From positions 62,001-126,000 of the IMG/VR virus record IMGVR_UViG_3300047994_000374: a stretch of DNA of 64,000 nt, one strand, 5' to 3'. The notes beneath the pieces are model-generated. The model was not told the origin of the DNA. It saw nothing but the letters and a program-made list of their open reading frames with translations, and did no database searches. Numbering within the stretch: the first letter of the stretch is position 1; every line of letters begins with the position of its first letter. The position numbers and the translations under genes were made by a program. Shown here one piece after another: positions 18,483 through 31,923 of the stretch.

Positions 18483-18500
18483 GTATACACTTTCATTCAA

Positions 18501-18886: not shown

Positions 18887-18895
18887 AATGGGAAA

Positions 18896-19702: not shown

Positions 19703-19912
19703 AGATTATCCTTGTGTGACTCGTGAAGATTGAATGCGGACACAATATGGCATTCTGGACAGCTTTGAAAACCACAAAGCACCTGCGGACCCTCTTTTTC
19801 AAAAACCTCTTGGAAGTCATCCTCGCGCCCGCAAAGCCCACAAGCAATCTTATGTCCGTCTTGTCTGATAACTTTCATATGATTATCCCAAATGCATTGT
19901 TTAAATGGGAAT

Positions 19913-20110
19913 TTAAAGAGTGTAGGTCTTTACAGAGTAAGTGCCCGGTTTAATTCCGTTTGATTCAGCCCAAGCATGTGCATCCTTTTCTGAACGAAAT
20001 GCTCCGCGAGTCAAGGTGTTAAAGCGCCCGGTTGATTCGGTAGGGTGCCAGATCGAAGCGCCATATTTAGTGAAGTGTAATACAACCGAGAAGTACTTGG
20101 AGTTGTTCAT
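19913..20110 (-). CDS. Hypothetical protein
   Basis: Box 25 nt upstream. Confidence 0.7.
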   Translation of the reverse strand: MNNSKYFSVVLHFTKYGASIWHPTESTGRFNTLTRGAFRSEKDAHAWAESNGIKPGTYSVKTYTL

Positions 20111-20143
20111 GTTATTGGCTCGTGTGAATGTATGAATGGGAAA

Positions 20144-20326
20144 TTATTTATAATGAGAAAGCGGAATGCCCAATTCCCAACTTGCCTCTGCTAATGTCTT
20201 CCCTAACCATACAACCTTACATGGAGAAACCCTACCATACCCATAGCGAGCCGGTCCTGCACCATCCAAAATCCAACCACGAATGATCGTCACTTTTGCC
20301 TTAATTTCTAATTCTCGCTGGGTCAT
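20144..20326 (-). CDS. Hypothetical protein
   Basis: ORF track; AAGGA upstream. Confidence 0.6.
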   Translation of the reverse strand: MTQRELEIKAKVTIIRGWILDGAGPARYGYGRVSPCKVVWLGKTLAEASWELGIPLSHYK

Positions 20327-20339
20327 TATGTATGTCCTT

Positions 20340-21239
20340 TTATATATCTACTTCCACACACACGTCATCGCTCGTATCCCCATATGAATCTGTATTCCCG
20401 TTACCCGTCCAATTCACCAGGTAATTGTCACCAAGCAAATTGCGCAGATCTTCAATTGCTTCATCACCCTCTTCTGGCGTATTACTCGGGAGCGCAATAA
20501 TCAAGTGTTCATCCGTCTCTTCCGTCGTATCATACCCTGCTTCTGACAATTTTTTAGCCGCTTCACTCAACAATTCCACACGACGTTTCTTTGTAATTTC
20601 ATCCGTATATTTTCCGGGCTCGTAAGAAACTGATTTCAAGCCTTGCTCACCAGTTTCAGGGTTTTGAGCCCATGTGTCCGTTACTCGCTCACAGCCACAA
20701 TGCATACATACCTCACGAATAATCACGCCTCCACCTTTCCCCCATACACCTGGATTCTCCTCAAGACCACCAAGAAGATCATAGGGGGATTGCCAGTCAT
20801 GATTCGTTTTTTCACACTCTGGCTCCTCAGGTTCAAGCGCAACTGTCGTTGAACCCTCTTCACCCGTTTCTTCGCAATACGCATAAATCGTACAAAAGAT
20901 AGTTCCGCGGTTAACATCATTATCGCACGAGCTTACATAATCCGAATAGTTCATATTCCCAGCGGCTTCAGACAAAGCCTCATCAACCGTTACAGCCTCA
21001 TAAGTGTGTCCCCAAGAATTTCCGGCTTCTCGAATTTCCCATGTGCGCTCTTCATCACTTTCAAGATAGTTTTCACGAGCCTCATCGCATGCTTTATTGG
21101 CATTATCAACAGCTCGACTATGTTCGCAGTTTTGGGTATCTTCACATTCACAGCTATCATAAGCTTCTTGTGCCTTTTCAAGAGACTCTTTTGCCAATTC
21201 ATACGCTTCAAATGCGGTCATTTCATTTTCTGAATTCAT
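20340..21239 (-). CDS. Highly acidic hypothetical protein with zinc-binding motifs
   Basis: 299 aa, D/E-rich; C...HDW...CxxCG; box 23 nt upstream. Confidence 0.8.
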   Translation of the reverse strand: MNSENEMTAFEAYELAKESLEKAQEAYDSCECEDTQNCEHSRAVDNANKACDEARENYLESDEERTWEIREAGNSWGHTYEAVTVDEALSEAAGNMNYSDYVSSCDNDVNRGTIFCTIYAYCEETGEEGSTTVALEPEEPECEKTNHDWQSPYDLLGGLEENPGVWGKGGGVIIREVCMHCGCERVTDTWAQNPETGEQGLKSVSYEPGKYTDEITKKRRVELLSEAAKKLSEAGYDTTEETDEHLIIALPSNTPEEGDEAIEDLRNLLGDNYLVNWTGNGNTDSYGDTSDDVCVEVDI

Positions 21240-21279
21240 ACTCTTATCCTCTTTTTTAATAAATGGGAGTTATTATTGT

Positions 21280-21540
21280 TTATTCATCTTGCGGGAAAGA
21301 ACTATGCCATTCCCCATGCAAAAATCGCTCTCCAATAATAATCAATTCTCGCGCTACTTCCCTAGGATTATTCGACTCAACCAATGCATGAGCTAATTCG
21401 TTTCCACGCTTGCCACTTGTAGATCCAGTCAAAAGAGCCGCAATATCAATCTTCAATCGTTTAATGGCATGGTTATCTTTTGCGACCTTGGACAGCTCTC
21501 GATTGATTGTGCCCGTGCTTCGCTGGTAGGGCTTGCTCAT
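21280..21540 (-). CDS. Hypothetical protein
   Basis: Box 25 nt upstream. Confidence 0.7.
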   Translation of the reverse strand: MSKPYQRSTGTINRELSKVAKDNHAIKRLKIDIAALLTGSTSGKRGNELAHALVESNNPREVARELIIIGERFLHGEWHSSFPQDE

Positions 21541-21576
21541 ATATTTACGTGTGCGCCTTTATGTAATGGGAAATTG

Positions 21577-21945
21577 TTATCTTGCTGCGGCATCAAAGTG
21601 ATCGGGAATCCAATTTCCAGAATCAATAGCAAGCTCGGAATGATACCCTTCGGGAAAGACTGGCACCATACCCGCTGAGCCGCAACGATAGTGCTCGGTC
21701 GTACTGTAGTCTTCTTTGGTGAAGTGTCGGAATTCAGGCACCGTTCCATATTCCAGTGCAGCGGTAATTTGAAACTCTTCCCAGTAGTCGGGAGAAATGT
21801 CCCAATCGCACTTGGTCATCACTTCTACGAGCCTGAGCAATTCTTGTGCCGAGTGCCTGAAATTAAAGCTCTCGTTGCAATTGTCCAGGATACTAGCAGC
21901 CATCCTGAGTTGTTCAATGCCTTTGAGCTTGCTATAGTCGATCAT
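21577..21945 (-). CDS. Hypothetical protein
   Basis: Box 24 nt upstream. Confidence 0.7.
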   Translation of the reverse strand: MIDYSKLKGIEQLRMAASILDNCNESFNFRHSAQELLRLVEVMTKCDWDISPDYWEEFQITAALEYGTVPEFRHFTKEDYSTTEHYRCGSAGMVPVFPEGYHSELAIDSGNWIPDHFDAAAR

Positions 21946-21980
21946 AATATTATCTTTCTTTTATATTGAATGGGAATTGT

Positions 21981-22256
21981 TTAGAGCTTGATTGCGAGGA
22001 CGACTTTTTGATTGCCATCCTGATCTTTACGGGTTTTTCCAGCTGCAATCGCGATGCACATTCCGGTAGCAGCAAACGTTCCACTATCACCAAACACAAC
22101 GGCTCGGATGCAAGAGTGAACGACATTGCAGGCGAATTGTTCTCGCTCCTCTTCCGTTCGATCTTTGATGAAAGGATTATTATTTTTAATCCAATCAATC
22201 ACCGCATCATACTCAGTGCACGAATCAACCAGACCTTTATACCAGGAGTCTCTCAT
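21981..22256 (-). CDS. Hypothetical protein
   Basis: Box 25 nt upstream; first gene after the promoter at 22319-22354. Confidence 0.7.
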   Translation of the reverse strand: MRDSWYKGLVDSCTEYDAVIDWIKNNNPFIKDRTEEEREQFACNVVHSCIRAVVFGDSGTFAATGMCIAIAAGKTRKDQDGNQKVVLAIKL

Positions 22257-22318
22257 ATCTTAGGTTGGCTTTATATATTAAATGGGAATTGGGATAGGGG
22301 GTTTTCGTCTGGGGCTTG

Positions 22319-22354
22319 CGGCAAGGCTTTTGCATATTAGCAATCTCTATACCA
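22319..22354 (-). promoter_or_regulatory. Face-to-face sigma54-type elements
   Basis: Minus TGGTATAGAGATTGCT; plus CGGCAAGGCTTTTGCA; both GG-N10-GC. Confidence 0.75.
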
Positions 22355-22368
22355 TGAAGCCCAAACGT

Positions 22369-22417
22369 AAAAAAAATATCCCCAACCTATAAACAGACTG
22401 GGGATAACTTTTTTTTT
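22369..22417. terminator. Bidirectional intrinsic terminator
   Basis: A8-TATCCCCA...TGGGGATA-T9. Confidence 0.75.
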
Positions 22418-22488
22418 ATGTGGATCGATCATATCATATGCGGATTGTTTTTAGTGAATGGGAAAGCCTGTTTTCTTTTTAGGTTAGT

Positions 22489-22523
22489 TGGTATGTATTG
22501 TGGATATTGCAAACGCTATGCCA
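22489..22523 (-). promoter_or_regulatory. Sigma54-type promoter with degenerate mirror element
   Basis: Minus TGGCATAGCGTTTGCA; plus TGGTATGTATTGTGG. Confidence 0.75.
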
Positions 22524-22542
22524 GTAATACAACAGGCAAAAG

Positions 22543-22569
22543 AAAAGCCCTACCATTACAGTAGAGCTT
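22543..22569 (-). terminator. Intrinsic terminator
   Basis: AAAAGCCCTACCATTACAGTAGAGCTT. Confidence 0.6.
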
Positions 22570-22682
22570 CAATGAATTAGATCCTCAGCCGCGATCTTCC
22601 TATACTTCTTTCTATTGTTTAAATGAGAATGAGCCGTGATGCTTAAGGTGCCTAGGATAACGGGTAAGATCCATGGTCAAGC

Positions 22683-22886
22683 TCACTTACACGCATACAC
22701 GCCACTAACTACACTACAATGAACATGCAGGGAGTATGCCACAGGTTTATCATGGATCTTGATAGTGCTGCTTTTATTATCGGCGTAGCTCCCCTGAACA
22801 TTCAAAGACGATTGAATGTCTTTGGTTTGAACGACATAATACCCGAGCCCGAGAACCGCTGCAACTACTACCATGAGAGTTTTCAT
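22683..22886 (-). CDS. Small membrane-anchored/secreted protein
   Basis: Hydrophobic N-terminus; box 28 nt upstream. Confidence 0.65.
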   Translation of the reverse strand: MKTLMVVVAAVLGLGYYVVQTKDIQSSLNVQGSYADNKSSTIKIHDKPVAYSLHVHCSVVSGVYACK

Positions 22887-22944
22887 TGTATGTATATCCT
22901 TGTGTGTGCGTTAGATGGGAATTGTTTATTATTGGGACGAAGCT

Positions 22945-23220
22945 TTAATGCTCGTTTGGTTTTTCGACTTCTTTACAGCAAGCTTCATAGGCTTTAGAGA
23001 ATTCCAGCCCGCTTTCAGAGCCGGTAAGAGAGGCGATCTTACTCGAGTATAAAACGCAAATGGGATGCCGGTTTAAAACATCCGTAGAAAAACCAGGCTC
23101 ACTCGAAAGGACGGCACGAAGATCTGTAATCGCTCGTGAGAAGGAATGAATTACACCGCTGGCATTACAAGCCATTTGGCAATCCAAAGCATCTTGTGAA
23201 AGCTCTTTAATCGTTTTCAT
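22945..23220 (-). CDS. Hypothetical phage protein
   Basis: Box 25 nt upstream. Confidence 0.75.
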   Translation of the reverse strand: MKTIKELSQDALDCQMACNASGVIHSFSRAITDLRAVLSSEPGFSTDVLNRHPICVLYSSKIASLTGSESGLEFSKAYEACCKEVEKPNEH

Positions 23221-23255
23221 TGTATTAGCCTTTTCTTATTTTTAAATGGGATTGT

Positions 23256-23525
23256 TTAGCGGTAGAAGGTACAGTTAGGGAGAAGAGCTTTAGCAGCCTC
23301 ACGAGATGGCGCTCGAAAGTAAACCTCGACACCGTTTTCGTTCCAAGCGCAAAACATGTAGGAGCCTCTTACCCAGCCCCAATAAGCGCCACCTTGATCA
23401 TAGTCGCCGTTCAGAGGCATATAGCGAAGATGAACCTTGCCCATAAGCTCGGTTGGTTTACAGTCCGATTGACGACCCATAGGAGCGCCGTACTTACTAC
23501 TTACGTTTCGTTTGAAGGGGAGCAT
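23256..23525 (-). CDS. Hypothetical phage protein (YGAPMGR...YDxGGAYWG motif)
   Basis: Box 25 nt upstream. Confidence 0.75.
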   Translation of the reverse strand: MLPFKRNVSSKYGAPMGRQSDCKPTELMGKVHLRYMPLNGDYDQGGAYWGWVRGSYMFCAWNENGVEVYFRAPSREAAKALLPNCTFYR

Positions 23526-23587
23526 AGTATATGTTTATTCTTATTGGTAAATGGGAAGGGGTTTAGTTTTTTATTTGGCAAGGCTTA

Positions 23588-23622
23588 TGGCACAATAATC
23601 TCATATAGCAAAACTTGATCCA
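23588..23622 (-). promoter_or_regulatory. Sigma54-type promoter with mirror element
   Basis: Minus TGGATCAAGTTTTGCT; plus TGGCACAATAATCTC. Confidence 0.7.
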
Positions 23623-23639
23623 TATATTCAAAGGACAAT

Positions 23640-23669
23640 AAAAAAGCCCGACCATTACAGTCAGGCTTT
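23640..23669 (-). terminator. Intrinsic terminator
   Basis: A6-GCCCGACCATTACAGTCAGGCTTT. Confidence 0.7.
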
Positions 23670-23678
23670 AATTACAGT

Positions 23679-23969
23679 TCAGATGTCAAGGGCGCAAAAC
23701 TGTTTGACCAAGATCTTGTGCTTGTAAACTTTGCACCAAGGACCACGACGAAACCAGCGCCCCGGACCACCATAAGAATCATACCAGCCCGTCAAGTCTT
23801 GTGCCAATTCGTTACGATCGGTCTCTTCATCAATCGGACCATAAACCGCCTCGACCGCTTTACGATCGTAGATGGCAATATGAGTGCAGGATTCGCCATC
23901 ATCATTAACTGTGCCAGACTTCAAGGGATTAATTGAGGGAAGGTCGACATATTCTTTATCGTGGCTCAT
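23679..23969 (-). CDS. Hypothetical protein
   Basis: Box 24 nt upstream. Confidence 0.7.
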   Translation of the reverse strand: MSHDKEYVDLPSINPLKSGTVNDDGESCTHIAIYDRKAVEAVYGPIDEETDRNELAQDLTGWYDSYGGPGRWFRRGPWCKVYKHKILVKQFCALDI

Positions 23970-24004
23970 ATGATTACCTGTCCTTAATATTAAATGGGAA
24001 TTGT

Positions 24005-24295
24005 TTAGCGTCCAATTTCAGTAATAAACTTTAGAGCTTGGCGCTTGGTGCTGAATTGCTGAAACTTTGAAGCCGTGTCAATGCTACCATCGGCATTAGC
24101 AAAGCGGACCGTAAAGAGGCGAGGCGAGCCATCATCGAATCGTTCCGAGGTAATGAAGTAACGACCAAAGTAGATCGGATTATACACGATCGACTTGAAA
24201 AAGCGCATGGTGTCTTTTGAAAACCAGTGCCCGCCAGAAGCCTTGTTTGCTTCCTGAATTTCGCGCATCGTATTGTAAACTTTGGGAGTGGGCAT
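24005..24295 (-). CDS. Hypothetical phage protein (WFSxDTMRFF motif)
   Basis: Start reassigned to ATG 24295, 24 nt after the box. Confidence 0.75.
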   Translation of the reverse strand: MPTPKVYNTMREIQEANKASGGHWFSKDTMRFFKSIVYNPIYFGRYFITSERFDDGSPRLFTVRFANADGSIDTASKFQQFSTKRQALKFITEIGR

Positions 24296-24522
24296 AATAT
24301 TCTCGCTATTGTTTATTAAATGGGAATTAGAATGCCCAGTACTTACAGCGATCGCAAGTATCATCACCAGGGTTTTGCGCCCCTAGGGAATGCTTACAGT
24401 GTTTGCAGGTAGGCTTAGGAATAGGGAGCCCATAACTATCGATTGCTTTTTTCGGGATAAGAAGCATATCCTTTGATTGTCTAATGTGGTAAATGGGAAT
24501 TTGGATCCTTGGTTTGGGCTTG

Positions 24523-24557
24523 TGGCGAGCTTATTGCTTTTTGCAAACATCATACCA
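24523..24557 (-). promoter_or_regulatory. Face-to-face sigma54-type elements
   Basis: Minus TGGTATGATGTTTGCA; plus TGGCGAGCTTATTGCT. Confidence 0.75.
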
Positions 24558-24574
24558 TATAACCAACTGACAAT

Positions 24575-24607
24575 AAAAAACCCGATCCATTATAGACCGG
24601 GTTTTTT
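24575..24607. terminator. Bidirectional intrinsic terminator
   Basis: A6-CCCGATC...GACCGGG-T6. Confidence 0.7.
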
Positions 24608-24877
24608 ATGCGGAGCGCCAACCATTCCTTTAAGTCGTCGTCGTGAGCATTGCCAGCTTGACAAGTATATCGTTTTATTTACAGCCCCATCACAATATAG
24701 GTTAAGAGAAACATACTGATACAACAGAGCACGCCACTAAAGACTTCATGTGCCATCATTCGTTTATCGTCGTTCATGTTATTACCTATTGAGATTATTA
24801 AAAGCCCTCTAACCCAAAAGATGAGCTAGAAGGCTTTAAAGAGTTAGATAAGGGCGATCCTAGTAAATTACAGGGAA

Positions 24878-25114
24878 TTACAGGGTAGAATATACGCGAC
24901 CCTTGGACCATACGCCCATCATTGACCCATCGCTTTGCTTTACCCCGACCCATTGCCATTCTTGAACGAACGCTAAATGATCCGCGAGGCTTGCACATTC
25001 AAGAGCCACTCGTTTATCCTTACGAAAGTCTCCGATGCGTTCATGGGTCGCGAGCGAATAAACCCCGAACGTCCGACCTTTCAAAGCTTTAACCGTTTGC
25101 ATAGTTATCTCCAA
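24878..25114 (-). CDS. Hypothetical protein
   Basis: ORF track; box upstream (likely start 25102). Confidence 0.6.
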   Translation of the reverse strand: MEITMQTVKALKGRTFGVYSLATHERIGDFRKDKRVALECASLADHLAFVQEWQWVGVKQSDGSMMGVWSKGRVYSTL

Positions 25115-25215
25115 TGGTATAGATTAAATGGGAAATGTTTGTGGCATGTTTATAATCGATTCTACGCTTTTTAAGGCTCCACGATTATTAACTTTATACA
25201 ATAACTCGAAGCTAT

Positions 25216-25231
25216 TGCAATGATAGTGCCA
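25216..25231 (-). promoter_or_regulatory. Consensus sigma54-type promoter (no mirror element)
   Basis: Minus TGGCACTATCATTGCA = TGGCAC-N5-TTGCA. Confidence 0.75.
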
Positions 25232-25260
25232 CAGCTATCCTAAAACCTTTACTCCCCTAA

Positions 25261-25455
25261 TCAATTGTAGGAATGGGAAAGATTAAAAACTTCGACCTTG
25301 AGCTTTCGTTCTGAGAAGTCTGAATAGGTCTCTTCCAATTCCCCGACCTTTGATTCCCAATATTCCCGAACCTCATTATCAGATCCACCTCCACTGTAAA
25401 GGGTCAGGAGGTTCATCTTGATCTCTTGAGCGAGCTTCTTATAATTCGTTTTCAT
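25261..25455 (-). CDS. Hypothetical protein
   Basis: Start reassigned to ATG 25455, 24 nt after the box. Confidence 0.65.
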   Translation of the reverse strand: MKTNYKKLAQEIKMNLLTLYSGGGSDNEVREYWESKVGELEETYSDFSERKLKVEVFNLSHSYN

Positions 25456-25499
25456 GATATACCCTATGGTAAATGTTAAATGGGAATTGTTTATAGGGC

Positions 25500-25694
25500 T
25501 TAATCTTTTTCCGTGCCACGCAAAAGATTGACCGCGCTCCAAAACCCATCATCAAAGCCCGCAAGGATATCGGCGACCTGTTTCTTTTTGAGCAATCCTT
25601 TTTCTAAATGGGATTGCAATTGAAGCTCATAGTTCTTTAGTGTCTCTTCCCGGATTCTCAAAACCTCAGATCGTTTCATTAGAGTATCCTCCAC
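25500..25694 (-). CDS. Hypothetical protein
   Basis: ORF track; likely start 25679 with GGAGG upstream. Confidence 0.65.
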   Translation of the reverse strand: MEDTLMKRSEVLRIREETLKNYELQLQSHLEKGLLKKKQVADILAGFDDGFWSAVNLLRGTEKD

Positions 25695-26087
25695 GAATGA
25701 ATAGTAAATGGGAAATAAGGAAGTTAGGCGTAAAGATTACTTAGTGGCTTTATAACCAAGAGCCATGCCAGCGACGAAACTACACATAACCCATGTCACG
25801 ACAACCGAGCCGAGTGTAAAAGCAACGCCCTGGACAAAATGCGACGTGAGGCCTGCGAGCGACAATCCAACGAGTAGAGCGATAATGATCTTCATGATAT
25901 CTCCTATAGGTATTATTAAATGGGAATTGTTTACTTTGAATTCATGCGGCGGATAATAAACTGAAGGACCGCATTCGCTTGTTTCATCTGGTTGAGTTTT
26001 AAAACGAAACCGTTCTTTTCGATCTGGCTCATATCCTTTTCTTATTCTTTTGATGAAATGGGAAATGCTCGTGTGTGTGGGTCTATG

Positions 26088-26122
26088 TGGCTGGCTCTTT
26101 GCTTATTGCACAACCCATACCA
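26088..26122 (-). promoter_or_regulatory. Face-to-face sigma54-type elements
   Basis: Minus TGGTATGGGTTGTGCA; plus TGGCTGGCTCTTTGCT. Confidence 0.7.
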
Positions 26123-26138
26123 CTTATCCACTGGACAT

Positions 26139-26175
26139 AAAAAAATCCCGATCAACTTAATGACCGGGATCCTTT
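26139..26175 (-). terminator. Intrinsic terminator
   Basis: A7-TCCCGATCA...TGACCGGGAT. Confidence 0.65.
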
Positions 26176-26713
26176 ACCTCACACTCCCGCCAAACTCAAA
26201 ACCTTATTGATCTCTTTCTCATAATCAGCCGCGGCGCCTTTAAGCCCCACCTTCTTTGCGGTTGCTGCCTGTTTACGAAGAAGCTCAACTCGGATGAAAA
26301 CTTGTGCATTGGTCATAGTAGTAGTAATATCCTTTGGTTATTATTAAATGGGATTATGGTTTAGATTGCACTTTACAAAGACTTTACGTACTCTTTTGAT
26401 CCATCCTGGTATTCAATGATCAAGACTTTATTACGATAATCTTGCGTCCTCCACTTCTTAACTTCTTTTGAGTCAACCTTCATGCCCGGTTCAAAAGTTC
26501 CAGGTCGCACCATTCGATCCATGATATCCTCCAAGGTTAATGATTAAATGGGAAAATGATATTATGAAACCACTGTAATTTAAGTATAGAACTGTTGTCT
26601 TTAAAAACCGCCCCTACAATCGATTATTAAAAGAAAAAGATATACTGACAAGGATCAGATCAAAAGCTCGTCTCAATTCATTTTCGCGACTGGAAACGGC
26701 ATATACTAATAAT

Positions 26714-26899
26714 TCAGCGAGCCGTTACTTTACCCGTAAGACATGCGAGATCAAAGCGCTCCTGAGAAAACTTAGGATTGTCTTGTCGAAAGAATACGGA
26801 GAAGCTGTCAATCAAAAGTCGAAGCTCATCAGGGGAAGCTCCACACTTCTTATGGTTGTGGATGATAGAGGCTGCGGCGATCATATGAGTTTTCGTCAT
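26714..26899 (-). CDS. Small protein, duplicate of 27680-27868
   Basis: DNPKFSQxRFDLACLTGKVTAR shared. Confidence 0.75.
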   Translation of the reverse strand: MTKTHMIAAASIIHNHKKCGASPDELRLLIDSFSVFFRQDNPKFSQERFDLACLTGKVTAR

Positions 26900-26958
26900 T
26901 GTAGTTATTATGGGGTTATTGTATTAAATGGGAATTGGGTTATTAGGGATTATGGGTC

Positions 26959-26994
26959 TGGTATAGGGTTTGCTTAATTGCGAATACTATGCCA
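26959..26994 (-). promoter_or_regulatory. Face-to-face sigma54-type elements
   Basis: Minus TGGCATAGTATTCGCA; plus TGGTATAGGGTTTGCT. Confidence 0.75.
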
Positions 26995-27013
26995 TTTGAC
27001 TTTTTACAACTAT

Positions 27014-27041
27014 AAAGAGCCCATAAACAACAGGGCTCTTT
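27014..27041. terminator. Intrinsic terminator
   Basis: AAAGAGCCC...GGGCTCTTT. Confidence 0.65.
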
Positions 27042-27055
27042 ATATAAACCACGCT

Positions 27056-27643
27056 TCAATTACAAGGGCAGGTAACTTTCCTAAGAGAGCAGTATTGATC
27101 CAAGTCGGCACAAGTAGGAGAATGTGCCGCGGTAGGGTAATCGGGATTCATCAAAGTACCTGATCCGGTATGCTTCAATCCGCAAGCGTGCCCCGTTTCA
27201 TGAGCAATGCTAACCGAATACATATCAGAATCGACGTCTGACATATTCTGCAGATAGATAGTGGCTCCTATCTGATCTGGCGAATAAGAGTCATTATACT
27301 CGTAGGATTCAAGCTCACCTTGAACCGAAGTGTAGGCAATGGTCCCACTATCACCATGCGCCACAATGTTAGCCTTAGTATCTTTACGGATCACAATCGT
27401 TGACCAACCTACATGAGCCTCATTAGGCAAAGAAAAAGCCGGAACGATCGTATAACTAAAAACCGGACCATCTTTGAATTGTGACCAGGATGACATCTCT
27501 GATTCAATAACGCTCACCTCTTCCGAAGAAAAGTCGCTTGAGATCTGGACATCATAACCACCAGGCAATCCCGACTCAGCGGCACAACCAACTGAGCCAA
27601 TTGCGAAGGAGCCGAGAACCGTCATCATCAAGAGCGTTTTCAT
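27056..27643 (-). CDS. Lipoprotein metzincin (matrixin-like) metalloprotease
   Basis: Lipobox SVGC; HETGHACGLKH plus LMNP. Confidence 0.8.
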   Translation of the reverse strand: MKTLLMMTVLGSFAIGSVGCAAESGLPGGYDVQISSDFSSEEVSVIESEMSSWSQFKDGPVFSYTIVPAFSLPNEAHVGWSTIVIRKDTKANIVAHGDSGTIAYTSVQGELESYEYNDSYSPDQIGATIYLQNMSDVDSDMYSVSIAHETGHACGLKHTGSGTLMNPDYPTAAHSPTCADLDQYCSLRKVTCPCN

Positions 27644-27679
27644 TATTGATTAGCCTTTTAGTTATATTGAATATGGGAA

Positions 27680-27868
27680 TTAGCGAGCCGTAACTTTACC
27701 CGTAAGACATGCGAGATCAAACCGATCTTGGGAAAACTTCGGGTTATCGTTACGGAAGAGGGTAGAGAAGCTGTCGATCAAAAGTCGTACCTGTTTATCT
27801 GTTGCACCATTCTTCTTGTGGTTGTGGATGATGGCAGCGGCTTCAATCATAAACTTTTTGGTTAGCAT
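27680..27868 (-). CDS. Small protein, duplicate of 26714-26899
   Basis: High protein and DNA identity to 26714-26899. Confidence 0.75.
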   Translation of the reverse strand: MLTKKFMIEAAAIIHNHKKNGATDKQVRLLIDSFSTLFRNDNPKFSQDRFDLACLTGKVTAR

Positions 27869-27935
27869 GGTGGTAGTGATTGGGGTTTATTGTTTATTGA
27901 ATGGGAATTGTAATAGCTCTTTGGTTCTGGTATTG

Positions 27936-27971
27936 TGGATCGGATCATGTAATATAGTAAACACTATACCA
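27936..27971 (-). promoter_or_regulatory. Degenerate face-to-face sigma54-type elements
   Basis: Minus TGGTATAGTGTTTACT; plus TGGATCGGATCATGT; same position in the cassette as the others. Confidence 0.55.
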
Positions 27972-27988
27972 ACCATACGCAAGACAAT

Positions 27989-28018
27989 AAAAAGCCCCGA
28001 CCATTACAGTAGGGCTTT
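27989..28018 (-). terminator. Intrinsic terminator
   Basis: A5-GCCCCGACCATTACAGTAGGGCTTT. Confidence 0.65.
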
Positions 28019-28026
28019 AGAACAAT

Positions 28027-28230
28027 TCAATCGATCGTCAGTTCCCCCATGATCAATGCATTCTCCGTGCCAATAACCGTATCCTCTTCGCAAGCCTCGC
28101 AATGATAATCCTCAGCGTCCGGCTCGACACCACCGCAAGTGAATTCATTGCAGGTAGTACAATGCCCGTCGTATTCTTCGGCAGTAATCGTTTTCATGAT
28201 CATTATCCTTTTTATTATAATCACATACAT
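28027..28230 (-). CDS. Zinc-ribbon protein, paralog of 15360-15551
   Basis: EFTCGGVEPDAE...CEAC...GTENAL shared. Confidence 0.7.
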   Translation of the reverse strand: MYVIIIKRIMIMKTITAEEYDGHCTTCNEFTCGGVEPDAEDYHCEACEEDTVIGTENALIMGELTID

Positions 28231-28234
28231 ACAC

Positions 28235-28468
28235 TTACACGCATAGCTTACTTATAGTGGGGGAAAAGCTAAACACTTGAACCATCGTAGAAGACTTCAA
28301 TCCAAGGATCGTTTCAACTCCACTGGAACTTTTGGCAGCAATCTTGGTATAGTTTCCTTTATCCGTGGAGATGTCGCGAATGTCCTCCACCATATATTCC
28401 GTGCCAAGAAAGATAAAGCGGACCCCAACATCTAATTCAGAGCTTCGTCGGTTGAGCATCATAACCAT
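28235..28468 (-). CDS. Hypothetical protein
   Basis: Box upstream; first gene of a cassette. Confidence 0.65.
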   Translation of the reverse strand: MVMMLNRRSSELDVGVRFIFLGTEYMVEDIRDISTDKGNYTKIAAKSSSGVETILGLKSSTMVQVFSFSPTISKLCV

Positions 28469-28515
28469 ACCCTATTCTTATAAGTAATGGGAAACGAGAA
28501 ACTCTTTGGTGCGCG

Positions 28516-28551
28516 TGGTATAAGGATTGTATAATAGCAAAGCTCATGCCA
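28516..28551 (-). promoter_or_regulatory. Face-to-face sigma54-type elements
   Basis: Minus TGGCATGAGCTTTGCT; plus TGGTATAAGGATTGTA. Confidence 0.75.
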
Positions 28552-28567
28552 TACAATCAAACCACAT

Positions 28568-28594
28568 AAAAAGCCCGGCAATAAAAGCCGGGCT
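28568..28594 (-). terminator. Intrinsic terminator
   Basis: A5-GCCCGGC...GCCGGGCT. Confidence 0.75.
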
Positions 28595-28607
28595 CTCTTA
28601 TGCTACG

Positions 28608-28796
28608 CTAAAAGACGTTAGGTGCGCACCACAACTCTATAGTGTCGTTCAAGCTTTCGAGCGCGCGGGAACGATCCTGATCGGTAGATAACGGATCGTA
28701 TTGCGTCGCGTTATAGTGATTGATTGCGTCTAACAGATCTTCGGCTCCGGTCAAAAGCATTCTCCGCAAACGTATAACCTTCTCAGTTGGTTTCAT
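28608..28796 (-). CDS. Hypothetical protein
   Basis: ORF track; GGAG upstream. Confidence 0.6.
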   Translation of the reverse strand: MKPTEKVIRLRRMLLTGAEDLLDAINHYNATQYDPLSTDQDRSRALESLNDTIELWCAPNVF

Positions 28797-28823
28797 GTTA
28801 TCTCCACAATAGTTATAGCTTTT

Positions 28824-29018
28824 TCATGATTCTTCTGAATCCTTGAAGGATCCATCGCTCCACAAGAAAACACCCGTGTAAGTCATTGCTTGCCCATCAT
28901 TATCAACATCATCACCTTCCCCGTAGATAATCAATTGCCCATAATTATCTCGCTCCAAAGAAAGGGGATCCGCACCATCAAGAAGATCATTCAACTCTTT
29001 TTTCGTGTATGTTTTCAT
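28824..29018 (-). CDS. Small acidic protein, paralog of 11160-11342
   Basis: Start reassigned to ATG 29018 after the box and AGGAG. Confidence 0.7.
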   Translation of the reverse strand: MKTYTKKELNDLLDGADPLSLERDNYGQLIIYGEGDDVDNDGQAMTYTGVFLWSDGSFKDSEES

Positions 29019-29071
29019 GGCATCTCTCCTAATCTTTTGAGGTAAATGGGAATAGCTTTTATTAGGGTAAC

Positions 29072-29106
29072 CGGCTTGTTTTTTGCTATTAGCTATAATC
29101 ATACCC
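29072..29106 (-). promoter_or_regulatory. Face-to-face sigma54-type elements
   Basis: Minus GGGTATGATTATAGCT; plus CGGCTTGTTTTTTGCT. Confidence 0.6.
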
Positions 29107-29123
29107 ACTATCTTTTGCCCAAT

Positions 29124-29159
29124 AAAAAAGCCGATCCCTTTCGAGACCGACTTCTTTTC
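29124..29159 (-). terminator. Intrinsic terminator
   Basis: A6-GCCGATC...GACCGAC-TTCTTTT. Confidence 0.55.
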
Positions 29160-29400
29160 TTTCAATCCTCCGAATGAAAGCGAGCGAAACAGTTTTCCCA
29201 ACCTTGCCAGTAATTGGCTTCGTAGTCCCCGTTATCGTCAGGAAACCGCGGCTCAACGCCATCAAGGCAATCGGTGTAACCTTGGTTGTATGCTTCGCGA
29301 TTCATCTTGACGGTTTTCATGATGGTATTCCTTTTGAGAGGGGAGGGAAAAAGAAACCGGGTAACTACCTTGAACTTTTATAAGAAATGGGATGAGCCGA

Positions 29401-29562
29401 TCAATAGCCTAACCAAGCCAGAAACTCACTCGCCTCATACTACTCATGATCCCCCATCTCACAAAGAAACTCCGCCATGTCGCAACAATGGTCCTTGATC
29501 TCTTTCATGGCGCGGGTCTTTGAGATGCGAAGGTCTTTGGCTGATTCGGAGTAGGTGGGCAT
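29401..29562 (-). pseudogene. Small gene with internal TAG (MPTYSESAK...GDHE*YEASEFLAWLGY*)
   Basis: ATG 29562 is 24 nt from a box; the frame continues plausibly past the TAG at 29440-29442. Confidence 0.45.
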
Positions 29563-29769
29563 AATAATAGGGCTAAAGAATAAGGAATGGGATAAGGACA
29601 ACATAAGATAACCTCCGCTTCGTTCACCCAATAGAGAATAATAGAGTGAAATGTAGGTAAGGAGGGGATAAAGGGATTGGAGCTGAATAAGAATTGTAAA
29701 TGATTGTAAAGTTTTATTATAGTTTTTTATATTGTAAATGATTGTAAATAAGTTATTATATTGTTTGAA

Positions 29770-29805
29770 TGGTATGTATAATGCTTTATTGCATGGGGTG
29801 TGCCA
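29770..29805 (-). promoter_or_regulatory. Outermost face-to-face sigma54-type elements
   Basis: Minus TGGCACACCCCATGCA; plus TGGTATGTATAATGCT. Confidence 0.7.
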
Positions 29806-29862
29806 GGCGGGAAAACTGGGGCAGATTGTCATGCGCGGCAGAGATAAGGCTCCCAAATCGAC

Positions 29863-29976
29863 TTAAAATCATAAAAACAAACTAATAAACTAAATTAAAA
29901 TCATAAAAACAAACTAATAAACTAAATTAAAATCATAAAAACAAACTATATTCTAAACTAATAAACTATATTCTAA
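29863..29976. repeat. Tandem repeats: 32-bp unit x2.7 plus a 14-bp direct repeat x2
   Basis: TTAAAATCATAAAAACAAACTAATAAACTAAA at 29863, 29895, partial 29927; AAACTATATTCTAA at 29943 and 29963. Confidence 0.9.
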
Positions 29977-30000
29977 CTTAAAACCAATCAACTCAAAATA

Positions 30001-30033
30001 CTACTACTACTACTACTACTATTATTATTATTA
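30001..30033 (-). repeat. (CTA)7(TTA)4 microsatellite, reading as TAAx4 TAGx7 in frame with the upstream CDS
   Basis: Read directly from the sequence. Confidence 0.9.
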
Positions 30034-30360
30034 AAGAAAAGCATCCATACTAATAACCCTCTTTAAAAGCTTTAACCCTTCCTCTGGATCATATTGTTTA
30101 TTCTCTTCTTTATAAACCAAATTATAGAGCTTATAAACAACTATCTCACTTACGCCCTTATACTCCCAATAAATTACTTCCCAACGAACCTTTATTTTAT
30201 TATCCTCTTTATCCTCAATAACAATGTTAATTTCAAACTTATCACTATATTTATCTGCATAGGGATAATAGTAAAAAGCATGGGTTTTATTTTTATGAAC
30301 CCCTATACATTTCATCTCCCTTACTTCTACTGAATACTTACCACACACTGGACATTTCAT
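30031..30360 (-). CDS. Zn-finger/xxFL array protein
   Basis: MKCPVC...C...H; ends MDAFL. Confidence 0.8.
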   Translation of the reverse strand: MKCPVCGKYSVEVREMKCIGVHKNKTHAFYYYPYADKYSDKFEINIVIEDKEDNKIKVRWEVIYWEYKGVSEIVVYKLYNLVYKEENKQYDPEEGLKLLKRVISMDAFL

Positions 30361-30612
30361 TTGATTTATACCTGGTTATTCTTTCTATATTGGGGCTTAA
30401 ATAAATCGACAATGGGAGTGAAAATAAATAGAGAAATCTACTAATAAAGTTGGATATTTTTGATTAATATTTGTGTTATTATTTGATTGTTTTAAAGCCT
30501 ATTTATTATATTTATTTGGCGGGAATTAGAAAAATAAGCTTACTTTGATGTTTGGGTCCGAAAGGCGAAAACATTATGAGCCGATTTAAAAAGACAAAGT
30601 TGGATATAGGGC

Positions 30613-30924
30613 TCAAATAAACCCCTGCAACCTAACCACACGATTCAACAGAATGTATGCTTCTTTGGGTGTATAGAATTTTTTGTCATGATAGAGCGTT
30701 CTCCCCGCATGAAGCACATCAATTTGTGTCGCATAAGTGTTTATTCTTTTTGGCTCGCTGTCAAAAGAATAAGAAGTTAACATTTGAAACTGAACGATAC
30801 CGCTGCTATTTTCTAAATGATAACGAATCCACATTGAATCTCCAACGCGTTCAAAATAATATGGAGCATGTCGACATATTTTATTATCCATAACCACCGC
30901 TTGATCGCAAATTGGACAATTCAT
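30613..30924 (-). CDS. Zn-finger/xxFL array protein
   Basis: MNCPIC; ends LQGFI. Confidence 0.8.
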   Translation of the reverse strand: MNCPICDQAVVMDNKICRHAPYYFERVGDSMWIRYHLENSSGIVQFQMLTSYSFDSEPKRINTYATQIDVLHAGRTLYHDKKFYTPKEAYILLNRVVRLQGFI

Positions 30925-31265
30925 AAAAAGGACCTTAATTTATCCACCTTAGATAAGAGCTGAATAGCCTCTTCATGGGCATATACATTGGCATCAGTAT
31001 AAATAATCTCCTGCCCATCAATAACTCGATCATCCAGAAGATAAATGATACTTACCCACCCGGAACTACTATCTATTCGGTTGGACTTTAATGGATGAGC
31101 CCCTGCTTCGAACCTATATTTATTATTTGAGCCGGCATTTTCAAAAAACCAAATGGTATATCCGAGTTCCAAATAATCATAGAAAAGATGCGATGGACCT
31201 GCTTCCTCACATCGCCAGCCCGAGTAAGTCTTGAAGCACGGATCATAACAAATTGGGCAGTTCAT
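30921..31265 (-). CDS. Zn-finger/xxFL array protein
   Basis: MNCPIC; ends LRSFL. Confidence 0.8.
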   Translation of the reverse strand: MNCPICYDPCFKTYSGWRCEEAGPSHLFYDYLELGYTIWFFENAGSNNKYRFEAGAHPLKSNRIDSSSGWVSIIYLLDDRVIDGQEIIYTDANVYAHEEAIQLLSKVDKLRSFL

Positions 31266-31297
31266 AAGAAAATCTGTAATTTAATCATTATTGTTAT

Positions 31298-31603
31298 TTA
31301 TGTGAAGCTATGCAATTTAATAAAACGATTCAGAAGTATTAACGCTTGAACCGGATCCCTTTTATTTCCTTGGTCTTCATAAATAAGTGTTTTAACTCCG
31401 AGGGAAAGATCACTACTACATTCTATTTTTGTCCTTGAATAAGGGGGAATGGGAACATCAATTGTGATAATGCTGTTATTCCCAATGATTTTAGAAATTA
31501 CAAAAGAATAACTGTAAAGATAAAATCCTCCGTCATCATGAAGGCAAGTCTTATGCCTTGTTATTATTTTTAAGCAAAACGGGCATATCATCGGCGGATT
31601 CAT
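31298..31603 (-). CDS. Zn-finger/xxFL array protein
   Basis: CPFC; ends LHSFT. Confidence 0.8.
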   Translation of the reverse strand: MNPPMICPFCLKIITRHKTCLHDDGGFYLYSYSFVISKIIGNNSIITIDVPIPPYSRTKIECSSDLSLGVKTLIYEDQGNKRDPVQALILLNRFIKLHSFT

Positions 31604-31923
31604 AGGAGCGCCTGCATCTTCATAAATCTCTTTAAAAGAGCAAAGCTTTCGGGAACACTATGGTGACAATTATCTTTATAAATCCAATCGGACCCAGCTT
31701 TATTCTTAATTCTAGTTCCATTGAATTCGCACTCAAGCCTCCAATAATGTTCTCGCGACGATTCTATAGACTTTTGAAAGAACAAAAATACTTGAATGGA
31801 ATAATAAGTTGAATTACAACTTTTATAAAGGTCTGTTCTATGATTATATTCTATGGTTTGTCCCTGGCAAATACTTCCTATGCTTTTTTTCTCCATCTCT
31901 TTACCACAAACAGGACAGTTCAT
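31600..31923 (-). CDS. Zn-finger/xxFL array protein
   Basis: MNCPVC; ends MQALL. Confidence 0.8.
   Translation of the reverse strand: MNCPVCGKEMEKKSIGSICQGQTIEYNHRTDLYKSCNSTYYSIQVFLFFQKSIESSREHYWRLECEFNGTRIKNKAGSDWIYKDNCHHSVPESFALLKRFMKMQALL

What the first reader, a model, noticed from the sequence alone, without database searches (positions are those of the whole stretch)
22280..29160. Stereotyped self-contained expression cassettes (terminator, dual promoter, box, 1-5 tiny genes) with signs of shuffling
Seen: nine terminators each lie about 15-20 nt upstream of the next -24 GG. Three share the loop ACCATTACAGT (22552, 23651, 28000) and a fourth is similar (24581-24601). Cargo genes have paralogs elsewhere: 26714/27680, 28027/15360 (31 identical nt CGTCCGGCTCGACACCACCGCAAGTGAATTC), 27056/3679, 28824/11160. 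Inference: repeated intergenic modules act as recombination handles for gain and loss of early genes, comparable to promoter-stem-loop cassettes of T4-like phages but built on sigma54.
Basis: partly seen in the sequence, partly recalled or inferred. Interest (0 to 1): 0.65.

Follow-up and report, generated by a model that had tools for sequence, protein, structure and literature searches.

The report
Terminator-promoter gene cassettes in huge phage
A 394-kb uncultured phage from moss splits part of its array of tiny unknown genes into short units, each bounded by a terminator and a sigma54-like promoter; related phages show these genes and modules have been shuffled, much like the known "PeSL" cassettes of T4-type phages.

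Summary
On the minus strand of window 22,279-29,153 there are nine composite modules. Each has a stable hairpin plus T-run, then 18-22 nt, then TGGYAT-N5-TTGCW, then about 40 nt, then the box TTCCCATTTA, and an ATG 31-32 nt after the box start. Together they delimit units of 0-5 ORFan genes. All four paralog claims hold.

The window lies in a 394-kb IMG/VR phage record from a moss metagenome.
- The "dual promoter" is a 35-36 bp dyad made of two opposed -24/-12-like half-sites.
- The box is not specific to the modules. It precedes about 55 genes across roughly 60 kb, and it is conserved in relatives.
- Relatives do show shuffling, but the five junctions I could resolve lie mostly in the box/5'UTR linker (four) or at a terminator edge (one). 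A sixth exchange ends exactly at the ORF boundaries. The modules themselves come and go.

The -24/-12 motif, with exact spacing, is enriched about 25-50-fold here and in three further related lineages. However, the phage encodes no sigma54 and no activator, and there are no RNA data. Sigma54 dependence is therefore plausible (about 0.4) but unproven.

Verdict: a PeSL-like system, a new variant of a known kind.

The parts
29043..29153 (-). Module C1. Terminator hairpin 29128-29153 plus T-run. -24/-12-like element 29092-29106 (GGGTAT..TAGC). Opposed half-site 29072-29086. Box 29043-29052. ATG at 29018.
28608..29018 (-). Cargo of C1: genes 28824-29018 (64 aa, paralog of 11160-11342) and 28608-28796 (62 aa).
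28484..28598 (-). Module C2. Terminator 28568-28598. Element 28537-28551 (TGGCAT-N5-TTGC). Opposed half-site 28516-28530. Box variant 28484-28493.
28027..28468 (-). Cargo of C2: genes 28235-28468 (77 aa) and 28027-28197 (56 aa, Cys-rich). The second is a paralog of 15360-15551 and shares an identical 31-mer with it. There is no box between the two genes.
27898..28017 (-). Module C3. Terminator 27990-28017 (loop ACCATTACAGT). Element 27957-27971 (-12 is AC, not GC). Box variant 27898-27907.
27056..27868 (-). Cargo of C3: 27680-27868 (62 aa, 75% identical to 26714-26899) and 27056-27643 (195 aa). The second is a predicted lipoprotein-like Zn-metalloprotease with HExxH and a weak Peptidase_M10 hit; it is a paralog of 3679-4320.
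26925..27045 (-). Module C4. Terminator 27015-27045. Element 26980-26994. Opposed half-site 26959-26973 (a perfect TGGTAT-N5-TTGC on the + strand). Box 26925-26934.
26179..26899 (-). Cargo of C4: 26714-26899 (61 aa), a 159-nt non-coding gap at 26555-26713, 26373-26522 (49 aa) and 26179-26316 (45 aa).
26055..26171 (-). Module C5. Terminator 26140-26171. Element 26108-26122. Opposed half-site 26088-26102. Box 26055-26064.
24679..26032 (-). Cargo of C5: genes 25931-26032, 25737-25895, 25500-25679, 25261-25455, 24878-25102 and 24679-24777. It also holds an internal promoter-like element at 25217-25231 (TGGCAC-N5-TTGCAATAG) with no terminator, and an extra terminator at 24803-24835 with no promoter.
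24490..24603 (-). Module C6. Terminator 24575-24603. Element 24543-24557. Opposed half-site 24523-24537. Box 24490-24499.
23679..24467 (-). Cargo of C6: 24327-24467 (46 aa), 24005-24295 (96 aa, DUF7447 / phrog_4655) and 23679-23969 (96 aa).
23548..23669 (-). Module C7. Terminator 23643-23669 (loop ACCATTACAGT). Element 23608-23622 (TGGATC-N5-TTGC). A second, one-mismatch element at 23578-23592. Box 23548-23557.
22683..23525 (-). Cargo of C7: 23256-23525 (89 aa), 22945-23220 (91 aa) and 22683-22886 (67 aa). These are followed by a 112-nt gap holding a degenerate box at 22620-22629.
22455..22570 (-). Module C8. Terminator 22544-22570 (loop ACCATTACAGT). Element 22509-22523 (TGGCAT-N5-TTGCA). Box variant 22455-22464. 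This is an empty unit: the ATG at 22432 runs straight into the next terminator.
22279..22408 (-). Module C9. Terminator 22377-22408. Element 22340-22354. Opposed half-site 22319-22333. Box 22279-22288. It heads the long box-only gene run that starts at 21981-22256. A module orthologous to C9 is seen in L148, in a different context.
855..31964 (-). Extent, within the window, of the box array (consensus aaTTCCCATTTA). About 55 copies lie on the gene strand, starting 31-32 nt before the ATG of most genes. The array continues about 30 kb upstream of the window in genome coordinates.
15360..15551 (-). Paralog of 28027-28197 (60% aa) that carries the identical 31-mer at 15449-15479.
3679..4320 (-). 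Paralog of the 27056-27643 metalloprotease (41% aa).
11160..11342 (-). Paralog of 28824-29018 (37% aa).

Best explanation
The region is the module-rich head of a hyperplastic block of small ORFan genes. The block belongs to a huge tailed phage of at least 394 kb that encodes rIIA, SbcC, a terminase, a DnaE-type polymerase and one sigma70-family factor.

Shown:
- Every gene carries a stereotyped linker of about 40 nt: stop codon, box TTCCCATTTA, purine-rich ribosome site, ATG.
- In 22.3-29.2 kb, nine composite modules cut the array into units of 0-5 genes. Each module is an intrinsic terminator followed, at a fixed 18-22 nt, by a -24/-12-like element.
- The box, the module design and the module-rich-then-box-only layout are conserved in relatives whose proteins are only 37-90% identical.
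- Gene order, gene content and module positions differ between relatives.
- The junctions that could be resolved sit in the linkers or at a module edge.

Inferred:
- Each module stops transcription coming from upstream and restarts it, so each unit is insulated. This is how PeSLs work in T4-type phages.
- The restart signal is most simply read as a promoter for host sigma54 holoenzyme, or for a factor with the same specificity.
- The many near-identical linkers and the similar modules give short homologies at which recombination deletes, duplicates and swaps single genes and modules.
For: - Anatomy and statistics of the modules.
- Box 31-32 nt before the ATG in 34 of 55 own genes and 26 of 30 L087 genes. 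The box is present in L086, L087 and L088.
- L087 has seven modules with the same 36-bp dyad design.
- Module zone followed by a box-only zone in both lineages.
- Shuffling. In L086 the protease homolog follows the homolog of 18300-18482. L087 reorders the homologs of 26316, 25895 and 25455, and has no module between the protease and the following 61-aa gene. In L148 the homolog of 22256 is preceded by a gene plus a box only, while the module orthologous to C9 lies elsewhere.
- Junctions in the box/UTR linker. A 72-aa gene indel runs from box to box.
- The duplication 26714/27680 includes the 5'UTR, the box and part of the module, and ends at the stop codon.
- An identical 31-mer inside paralogs that are otherwise 78% identical points to recent conversion.
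- Empty unit C8.
- -24/-12 motif with exact spacing is enriched in three further related lineages: L139-141 (4-7 hits per contig against about 0.15 expected) and G001, a GC 51% phage with 66% terminase identity (five copies in 3 kb). In those, the base at the sigma70 '-7' position is G or A.
- Definition and behaviour of PeSLs: PMC2839356 and PMC4122927.
Against: - No transcript data exist for this phage, so promoter and terminator activity, timing ('early') and start sites are all unproven.
- The phage encodes no sigma54, no bEBP and no GAFTGA motif. No conserved upstream activator site is visible, because a terminator and coding DNA lie directly upstream.
- In this phage and in L087 the element is one arm of a 35-36 bp dyad. 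A sigma54 promoter does not need that.
- In L087 the centre reads TGnTAYAAT, an extended -10.
- One L087 module has +2 spacing.
- Junctions in linkers are also what selection for intact genes would leave after random recombination.
- One gene exchanged with box-less phages has ORF-exact borders.
- Near-identical strains are all colinear, so no ongoing rearrangement was caught.
Confidence: 0.62

Rival explanations
1. The TGG..TTGC element is not a sigma54 promoter. It is the half-site of a dimeric DNA-binding regulator, phage- or host-encoded. The 35-36 bp dyad is then an operator centred on an extended -10 sigma70 promoter (TGn-TAnnAT), and the regulator switches the units on or off together.
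For: - Dyad TGG-N10-GC / 5-6 bp / GC-N10-CCA in 6-7 of the 9 own modules, 6 of 7 in L087, and in L148.
- The bases inside the arms do not covary, which fits protein contacts rather than a hairpin.
- L087 centres read TGC-TAYAAT in 7 of 7 modules.
- The A at the second position of the hexamer is invariant.
- L139 and L140 have hubs with many copies in both orientations, some with TTGA instead of TTGC, next to tandem iterons. This is typical of protein-binding arrays.
- The phage has no sigma54 or EBP.
Against: - The -7 T is present in only 3 of 9 own modules and in 0 of 5 in G001, and the gene-proximal L139 elements read AATAGG or AATAAG. The sigma70 reading therefore fails across the family.
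- G001 and the gene-proximal L139-141 elements have no second arm.
- What is conserved across lineages with GC from 36 to 51% is exactly GG-N10-GC with the sigma54 flanks.
Confidence: 0.3
2. The modules and boxes are purely regulatory and play no part in recombination. The mosaic pattern comes from rare illegitimate recombination anywhere, followed by selection for intact genes, which leaves junctions at gene borders.
For: - A 72-aa gene is 89-90% identical between L087 (box type) and L139/L140 (no box). Its nucleotide similarity starts at the ATG and ends at the stop codon.
- Linkers fill almost the whole intergenic space, so any intergenic junction must fall in or beside them.
- No variant forms were seen among near-identical strains.
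Against: - Junctions against the closest relative keep the box-to-ATG register exactly, and one indel runs from box to box.
- Adjacent linkers are near-identical in L086.
- Four modules form a 76-nt repeat family.
- A 31-nt identical patch in diverged paralogs shows that homologous exchange between repeats does occur.
- PeSL-mediated recombination is documented experimentally for T4-type phages (PMC2839356).
Confidence: 0.35
3. The box is the real per-gene promoter, recognised by host RNA polymerase redirected by a phage factor. It would give transcripts with leaders of about 15 nt. On this view the terminator/-24/-12 modules only add an initial, host-dependent layer to the first 7 kb.
For: - The box is a single block of about 12 nt with no upstream partner, at a fixed 31-32 nt from the ATG and about 12 nt from the ribosome site. 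It is restricted to one gene block and conserved in relatives.
- A different motif, GATATATA, marks genes in the rest of the genome.
- The phage has one sigma70-family gene.
Against: - A sigma factor with regions 2 and 4 would be expected to need two promoter blocks.
- The box could equally be an RNA processing, stability or translation signal.
- There are no RNA data.
- Box-less relatives (L139-141) express homologous genes without it.
Confidence: 0.25
4. The 36-bp dyads are targets of a site-specific recombinase (lox- or attC-like), and the units are excised and inserted as circles.
For: - The geometry, 15-bp inverted arms around a 5-6 bp core, resembles lox/FRT-type sites.
- The units are directly oriented, and one is empty.
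Against: - No tyrosine recombinase is found in a 92%-complete genome.
- The central cores differ between modules, so they would not recombine.
- Resolved junctions are not at the dyads.
Confidence: 0.04

Closest known systems
PeSL (promoter-early stem-loop) regulatory cassettes of T4-type phages (Arbiol et al. 2010, PMC2839356; Comeau et al. 2014, PMC4122927)
   Same: - Small composite promoter + stem-loop terminator motifs, repeated in hyperplastic regions upstream of ORFans.
- A stereotyped run from stop codon through to Shine-Dalgarno and ATG.
- A stem-loop or dyad can overlap the promoter.
- Indels and replacements between relatives end in these motifs.
   Different: - The promoter here is not the sigma70 -35/-10 consensus but a -24/-12-like element inside a 36-bp dyad.
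- A separate canonical terminator sits at a fixed 18-22 nt upstream.
- An additional per-gene box has no PeSL counterpart.
- Most resolved junctions lie at that box linker.
- Mini-circles and promoter/terminator activity are untested.
- The phage is only distantly T4-like.
Sigma54 (RpoN) -24/-12 promoters, consensus TGGCAC-N5-TTGCW
   Same: - The GG and GC dinucleotides with exact spacing, the flanking T, the A at the fifth position, and TTGC followed by A/T.
- The same core recurs in four phage lineages with different GC content.
   Different: - No activator ATPase or sigma54 gene in the phage, and no recognisable upstream activator site.
- An opposed second copy forms a dyad.
- TGGTAT is more common than TGGCAC.
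- Use for arrays of phage ORFan genes is without a clear precedent. Only single predicted sigma54-like promoters, such as in Pseudomonas phage YuA, came up (PMC10914365).
Class-specific viral promoter motifs placed in front of many genes, for example the T4 late TATAAATA or the Mimivirus AAAATTGA motif (from my own knowledge, not tested here)
   Same: A short motif on the coding strand in front of a large share of the genes of one class, as with the box.
   Different: - The box sits at an unusually fixed distance from the ATG (31-32 nt).
- Whether it acts on DNA or on RNA is unknown.
Integron gene cassettes with attC sites
   Same: Arrays of small co-oriented genes separated by imperfect inverted repeats, with gene gain and loss.
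   Different: - No integrase.
- The repeats carry terminator and promoter features.
- Junctions are not in the dyad.

Membership tests
PeSL-type mobile regulatory cassette | Composite intergenic motif combining a promoter and a stable stem-loop that can terminate transcription | tested here: met
   Nine hairpin + T-run terminators (-12.8 to -25.2 kcal/mol), each 18-22 nt upstream of a conserved promoter-like element. This is met at sequence level only.
PeSL-type mobile regulatory cassette | The promoter part matches the host sigma70 -35/-10 consensus with an AT-rich upstream region | tested here: not met
   No conserved -35 was found. The sigma70 scan is at chance level (24 found against 25 expected). 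The conserved core is GG-N10-GC. A -10-like hexamer is good only in the L087 lineage.
PeSL-type mobile regulatory cassette | Concentrated in hyperplastic regions, upstream of ORFans | tested here: met
   The cargo is 23 small genes. Only DUF7447 and a weak M10 protease hit have any family. The modules are confined to 7 kb of a 60-kb small-gene block.
PeSL-type mobile regulatory cassette | Indels and replacements between related phages end in the motifs | tested here: inconclusive
   Of five resolved junctions, four are in the box/5'UTR linker and one at a terminator edge. Modules are present or absent at orthologous gene borders. There are too few junctions, and the relatives are fragmentary.
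PeSL-type mobile regulatory cassette | Formation of mini-circles by exchange between nearby motifs; measured promoter and terminator activity | not testable with these tools
   Only contigs of DNA runs were available and no joints of that kind were seen. No RNA runs exist.
Sigma54-dependent promoter | GG at -24 and GC at -12 with invariant spacing, within TGGCAC-N5-TTGCW | tested here: met
   - GG in 9 of 9 own modules and GC in 8 of 9, all with the same spacing.
- L087: 6 of 7 canonical, one with +2 spacing.
- G001: 5 of 5, reading TGGCAY-N5-TTGC.
- L139-141: multiple copies.
- About 25-50-fold over shuffles.
Sigma54-dependent promoter | Requires a bEBP AAA+ activator, usually bound at an upstream site | tested here: not met
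   No PF00158 hit above noise, no PF04552 hit, and no GAFTGA motif in any ORF of the 92%-complete phage. The upstream 60 nt are a terminator and the preceding gene, with no shared extra motif. Host activators cannot be assessed because the host is unknown.
Sigma54-dependent promoter | Transcription start about 12 nt downstream of the GC, dependent on rpoN | not testable with these tools
   No RNA data.
Extended -10 sigma70 promoter | TGn followed by TATAAT, with A at -11 and T at -7 | tested here: not met
   Met in L087 (7 of 7) and L148. The -7 T is present in only 3 of 9 own modules and 0 of 5 in G001, and is absent in the gene-proximal L139 elements.
Intrinsic (Rho-independent) terminator | GC-rich hairpin directly followed by a U-run on the transcribed strand | tested here: met
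Integron or site-specific recombination cassette | A cognate recombinase, and sites with identical crossover cores | tested here: not met
   No tyrosine recombinase. The dyad centres differ between modules.

The most novel reading that the evidence does not exclude
A family of huge environmental phages (this one, the L087 type, the L139-141 type and G001) drives its arrays of small accessory genes from host sigma54 (-24/-12) promoters while encoding neither sigma54 nor an activator. That would imply either a new way of activating sigma54 holoenzyme or dependence on a host activator acting from solution. In addition, these phages would use a dedicated 10-nt box at -32 of about 130 genes as a second, phage-specific expression signal that doubles as a recombination handle.
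Probability: 0.25. Interest if true: 0.8.

Novelty: new variant of a known kind. Interest (0 to 1): 0.58.

Why it matters
Hyperplastic ORFan regions are where large phages gain and lose host-takeover and counter-defence genes. PeSLs are the only well-described mechanism linking regulatory repeats to that plasticity, and they are known only from T4-type phages with sigma70 promoters.

This region shows the same logic in an unrelated-looking huge phage lineage from moss, built from different parts: a canonical terminator, a -24/-12-like dyad and a per-gene box. That suggests the design is convergent and general.

If the promoters really use sigma54, this would be the first phage gene programme built on that sigma factor. 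It would also pose a direct question about how sigma54 is activated without a phage EBP.

The box gives a simple sequence tag for finding this class of genes, and members of this phage clade, in metagenomes.

Tried and rejected
- **Nucleotide searches.** Megablast and blastn of the region against cultured phages found nothing. The DnaE polymerase and RF searches found only about 32-38% relatives.
- **Box patterns in IMG/VR.** The 17-mer gave single chance hits. The two-box pattern gave 45 loci, of which the multi-copy ones are coding tandem repeats in AT-rich viruses, not relatives.
- **Terminase relatives.** G001-G005 lack the box.
- **The 299-aa protein 20340-21239.** It belongs to a widespread family whose best contexts are unrelated phages. 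It was no use for synteny.
- **Leaderless-mRNA idea** (box as upstream element, with TAnnnT at -12..-7 from the ATG). It fits L087 (15 of 29) but not this phage (2 of 49), where the purines at -10/-9 look like a ribosome site. Rejected.
- **Cyanobacterial host via HIP1.** Not enriched.
- **Rfam on 20-32 kb.** No family. The non-coding gaps show no gene remnants and no exceptional folding.
- **Site-specific recombination.** No integrase.
- **Phage multisubunit RNA polymerase.** None.
- **Read laying.** The moss runs X3, X5 and X8 hold the same strain. X7 holds a relative of about 95% identity, with loose ends near 22633 and 25161 and one joint 27643>28261. That joint comes from a short contig at 5-fold higher depth, so I give it no weight.
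- **L087-type strains.** They are colinear with one another.

Full report
**What the window is**

The window is bases 62,001-126,000 of a single 394,192-bp IMG/VR virus record. The record is linear and CheckV rates it 92% complete. It encodes a large terminase (with an insert), a DnaE-type polymerase, SbcC, rIIA, tail fibres, a release factor, an intein-bearing IMPDH and homing endonucleases. It is therefore a huge tailed phage.

The phage has no close cultured relative. Public runs that hold the region are moss metagenomes, and none is RNA. The genome encodes one sigma70-family factor with regions 2 and 4. I found no multisubunit RNA polymerase, tyrosine recombinase, sigma54, sigma54 activator or GAFTGA motif.

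**Checking the observation**

All genes between window 1 and about 37,600 are on the minus strand. Read on that strand, 22,279-29,153 contains nine modules with the same order of parts:
- a GC-rich hairpin with a T-run (-12.8 to -25.2 kcal/mol);
- 18-22 nt from the end of the stem to TGG;
- a 15-nt element TGGYAT-N5-TTGC(W);
- about 40 nt;
- the box TTCCCATTTA;
- an ATG 31-32 nt after the start of the box.

The strict pattern TGGYAY-N5-YTGC occurs 7 times in these 6.9 kb, against 0.14 in shuffles, and is at chance level in the rest of the genome.

Four modules (C8, C7, C6, C3) form a 76-nt repeat family, and three of these share the loop ACCATTACAGT.

The units hold 0-5 genes. The unit at 22,455-22,570 is empty: its box and ATG run straight into the next terminator. 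There are two irregular pieces: a canonical-looking element at 25,217-25,231 with no terminator, and a terminator at 24,803-24,835 with no promoter.

**Three corrections to the description**

1. *The "dual promoter" is a dyad.* In most modules the gene-ward element is followed, after 5-6 bp, by an inverted copy on the other strand. This gives TGG-N10-GC / centre / GC-N10-CCA over 35-36 bp. The bases inside the arms are not complementary, so the symmetry looks like a protein-binding feature rather than a hairpin.

2. *The box is not a module part.* About 55 copies lie on the gene strand in the window and 62 in the genome. Nearly all are in genome 30-94 kb, and they sit in front of nearly every small gene at a fixed distance. 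No second conserved block lies upstream. The purines at -10/-9 look like a ribosome site.

3. *Other genes carry a different motif.* Genes outside this block are marked by GATATATA instead.

**Relatives**

Exact-protein and word searches recovered several groups of related contigs:
- *The same strain in other assemblies*: L085, 99.96% identical and colinear, plus colinear Logan contigs.
- *A close relative from one ENA sample*: L086, L148 and L149, with shared segments 78-90% identical in DNA.
- *A more distant lineage*: L087, L088, L145 and L146, with proteins 37-75% identical.
- *Still more distant contigs*: L139-141, which share four gene families with the block.
- *Terminase relatives*: G001-G005, 66-73% identical.

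The box is conserved in the first three groups, with 35 copies in the 13 kb of L087, again 31-32 nt from the ATG. It is absent from L139-141 and G001-G005.

L087 has seven modules of the same design, including the 36-bp dyad. As in this phage, they lie upstream of the homolog of gene 21981-22256 and are absent downstream of it.

**Is there shuffling, and where are the junctions?**

Gene order is not conserved.
- In L086 the metalloprotease homolog follows the homologs of genes that lie 7-9 kb downstream of it in this phage.
- L087 orders the homologs of 26316, 25895 and 25455 differently. It has only a box where this phage has module C4, and it places other genes between shared ones.
- In L148 the homolog of 21981-22256 is preceded by another gene and a box, not by a module. 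A clear ortholog of module C9, with an identical hairpin and TGGTATAG..TTGC, lies further downstream behind a gene that this phage lacks.

Five junctions against the L086/L148 type could be placed at nucleotide level:
- two just after the box and conserved 5'UTR, a few bases before the ATG; one of these marks a 72-aa gene indel that runs from box to box;
- one at the 5' edge of a box;
- one 9 nt after the next ATG;
- one at the 5' side of a terminator.

The internal duplication 26714/27680 carries its 5'UTR, box and part of the module, and stops at the stop codon. Adjacent linkers in L086 are nearly identical to each other.

Shuffling is therefore real, and the junctions lie in the repeated regulatory DNA. 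The usual unit, however, is one gene with its linker, and the modules behave as separate movable pieces.

Two cautions apply. Linkers fill the intergenic space, so selection for intact genes alone would also leave junctions there. And a 72-aa gene shared at 89-90% between L087 and the box-less L139/L140 has similarity confined exactly to the ORF. No structural variant was seen among near-identical strains.

**Is it sigma54?**

For:
- GG and GC with exact spacing, the flanking T, the A at the fifth position, and TTGC followed by A/T are the best-conserved columns.
- The same core recurs with strong enrichment in L139-141 upstream of small genes, often behind hairpins.
- It also recurs as a cluster of five TGGCAY-N5-TTGC-TAATAG elements within 3 kb of G001, a phage of 51% GC.
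- In those lineages the position that would be the sigma70 -7 T is G or A, and there is no second arm. The only shared feature is therefore the -24/-12 core.
- A specificity conserved across phages with such different base composition fits a universal host factor.

Against:
- The phage has no sigma54, activator or GAFTGA motif.
- There is no room for, and no sign of, an upstream activator site.
- The dyad in this phage and in L087 is unexplained by sigma54.
- The L087 centres read as a perfect extended -10.
- One L087 module has +2 spacing.
- L139 and L140 have hubs with many copies in both orientations, some with TTGA, beside tandem iterons. That looks like an array of protein-binding sites.
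- Sigma54 promoters in phages appeared in the literature I searched only as isolated predictions, such as YuA.

I put sigma54 dependence at about 0.4, a sigma70 promoter with an operator at about 0.3, and another factor at the remainder.

**Comparison with known systems**

The closest known system is the PeSL of T4-type phages. PeSLs are small promoter + stem-loop cassettes in hyperplastic regions upstream of ORFans. They have proven promoter and terminator activity, recombination between copies and mini-circles (PMC4122927).

This region shares the architecture, the genomic setting and, qualitatively, the shuffling. It fails the sigma70-consensus criterion, adds a per-gene box, and its activities are untested. 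I therefore file it as working like a PeSL system and as a new variant of that kind, not as a member in the strict sense.

**Limits**
- The host is unknown.
- There are no RNA data.
- The relatives are short contigs.
- Read laying could use only Logan contigs.
- Only five junctions were resolved.
- "Early" expression is an assumption carried over from T4.

Noticed in passing
window 855-31964 (minus strand); genome about 30-94 kb: The box TTCCCATTTA sits 31-32 nt before the ATG of nearly every small gene in a 60-kb block, with 62 copies on one strand against 6 on the other. It is conserved in relatives L086, L087 and L088 and absent from the rest of the genome. Whether it acts on DNA or on RNA is unknown.
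   Followed up: partly
window 30031-37604 (minus strand): Directly upstream of the modules lie about 22 tandem genes of about 100 aa, often with overlapping stop and start codons. They form one diverged paralog family that starts with MNCPxC (zinc-ribbon-like). GC is about 33%, and there is no box.
   Followed up: partly
genome beyond 126 kb (loci L021-L034): The motif GATATATA(A/G) is enriched about 14-fold upstream of genes in the structural and replication part of the genome (24 of 298 upstream regions). It is a candidate late or middle promoter, possibly for the phage sigma factor at L138:1168-1911.
   Followed up: no
L139:1-320; L140:6600-7260: Distant relatives have a non-coding hub with about 10 copies of TGGCAT-N5-CTTG(A/C) in both orientations. 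In L140 the hub lies next to a 32-nt tandem iteron array (6600-6810). It may be an origin or a regulatory hub.
   Followed up: partly
L087:1089-1307 compared with L139:1576-1794 and L140:8320-8646: A 72-aa gene is 89-90% identical between phages whose other shared proteins are about 38% identical. The DNA similarity starts at the ATG and stops at the stop codon, indicating recent single-gene transfer.
   Followed up: yes
window 28116-28146 and 15449-15479: An identical 31-mer lies inside paralogs that are otherwise about 78% identical, which is likely a gene-conversion patch. Logan contigs break exactly here (contig start at 28144), which is a k=31 assembly effect.
   Followed up: partly
whole genome: GTAC (265 observed, 1301 expected) and GGCC (105 observed, 413 expected) are strongly avoided, suggesting restriction avoidance. 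HIP1 is not enriched.
   Followed up: no
window 22000-28000: GC skew is about 0 in the module region, against -0.11 to -0.16 in the rest of the minus-strand block, although the coding strand is the same.
   Followed up: no
window 4424-4499: A tRNA-Leu (anticodon TAA) is embedded in the small-gene block on the gene strand.
   Followed up: no
window 27056-27643, 3679-4320; genome 53193-53714, 347676-348254: A four-member family of small predicted lipoprotein-like Zn-metalloproteases (HExxH, conserved Cys). Homologs are found in all the related phage contigs and served as the marker that located relatives.
   Followed up: partly
window 56855-59041; L029:71-3031: The IMPDH gene is interrupted by an intein (Hint and intein-splicing hits). 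The large terminase is 986 aa, against matches of about 620 aa (about 1,860 nt) in most relatives, which suggests an insert there too.
   Followed up: no
L087:5740-5865 and L087:11480-11634; window 26555-26713, 25135-25260: Stretches of 110-160 nt with no ORF lie between a box, or a promoter module, and the next box. There is no Rfam hit, and the own-phage gaps showed no exceptional folding. The L087 stretches were not folded or searched.
   Followed up: partly
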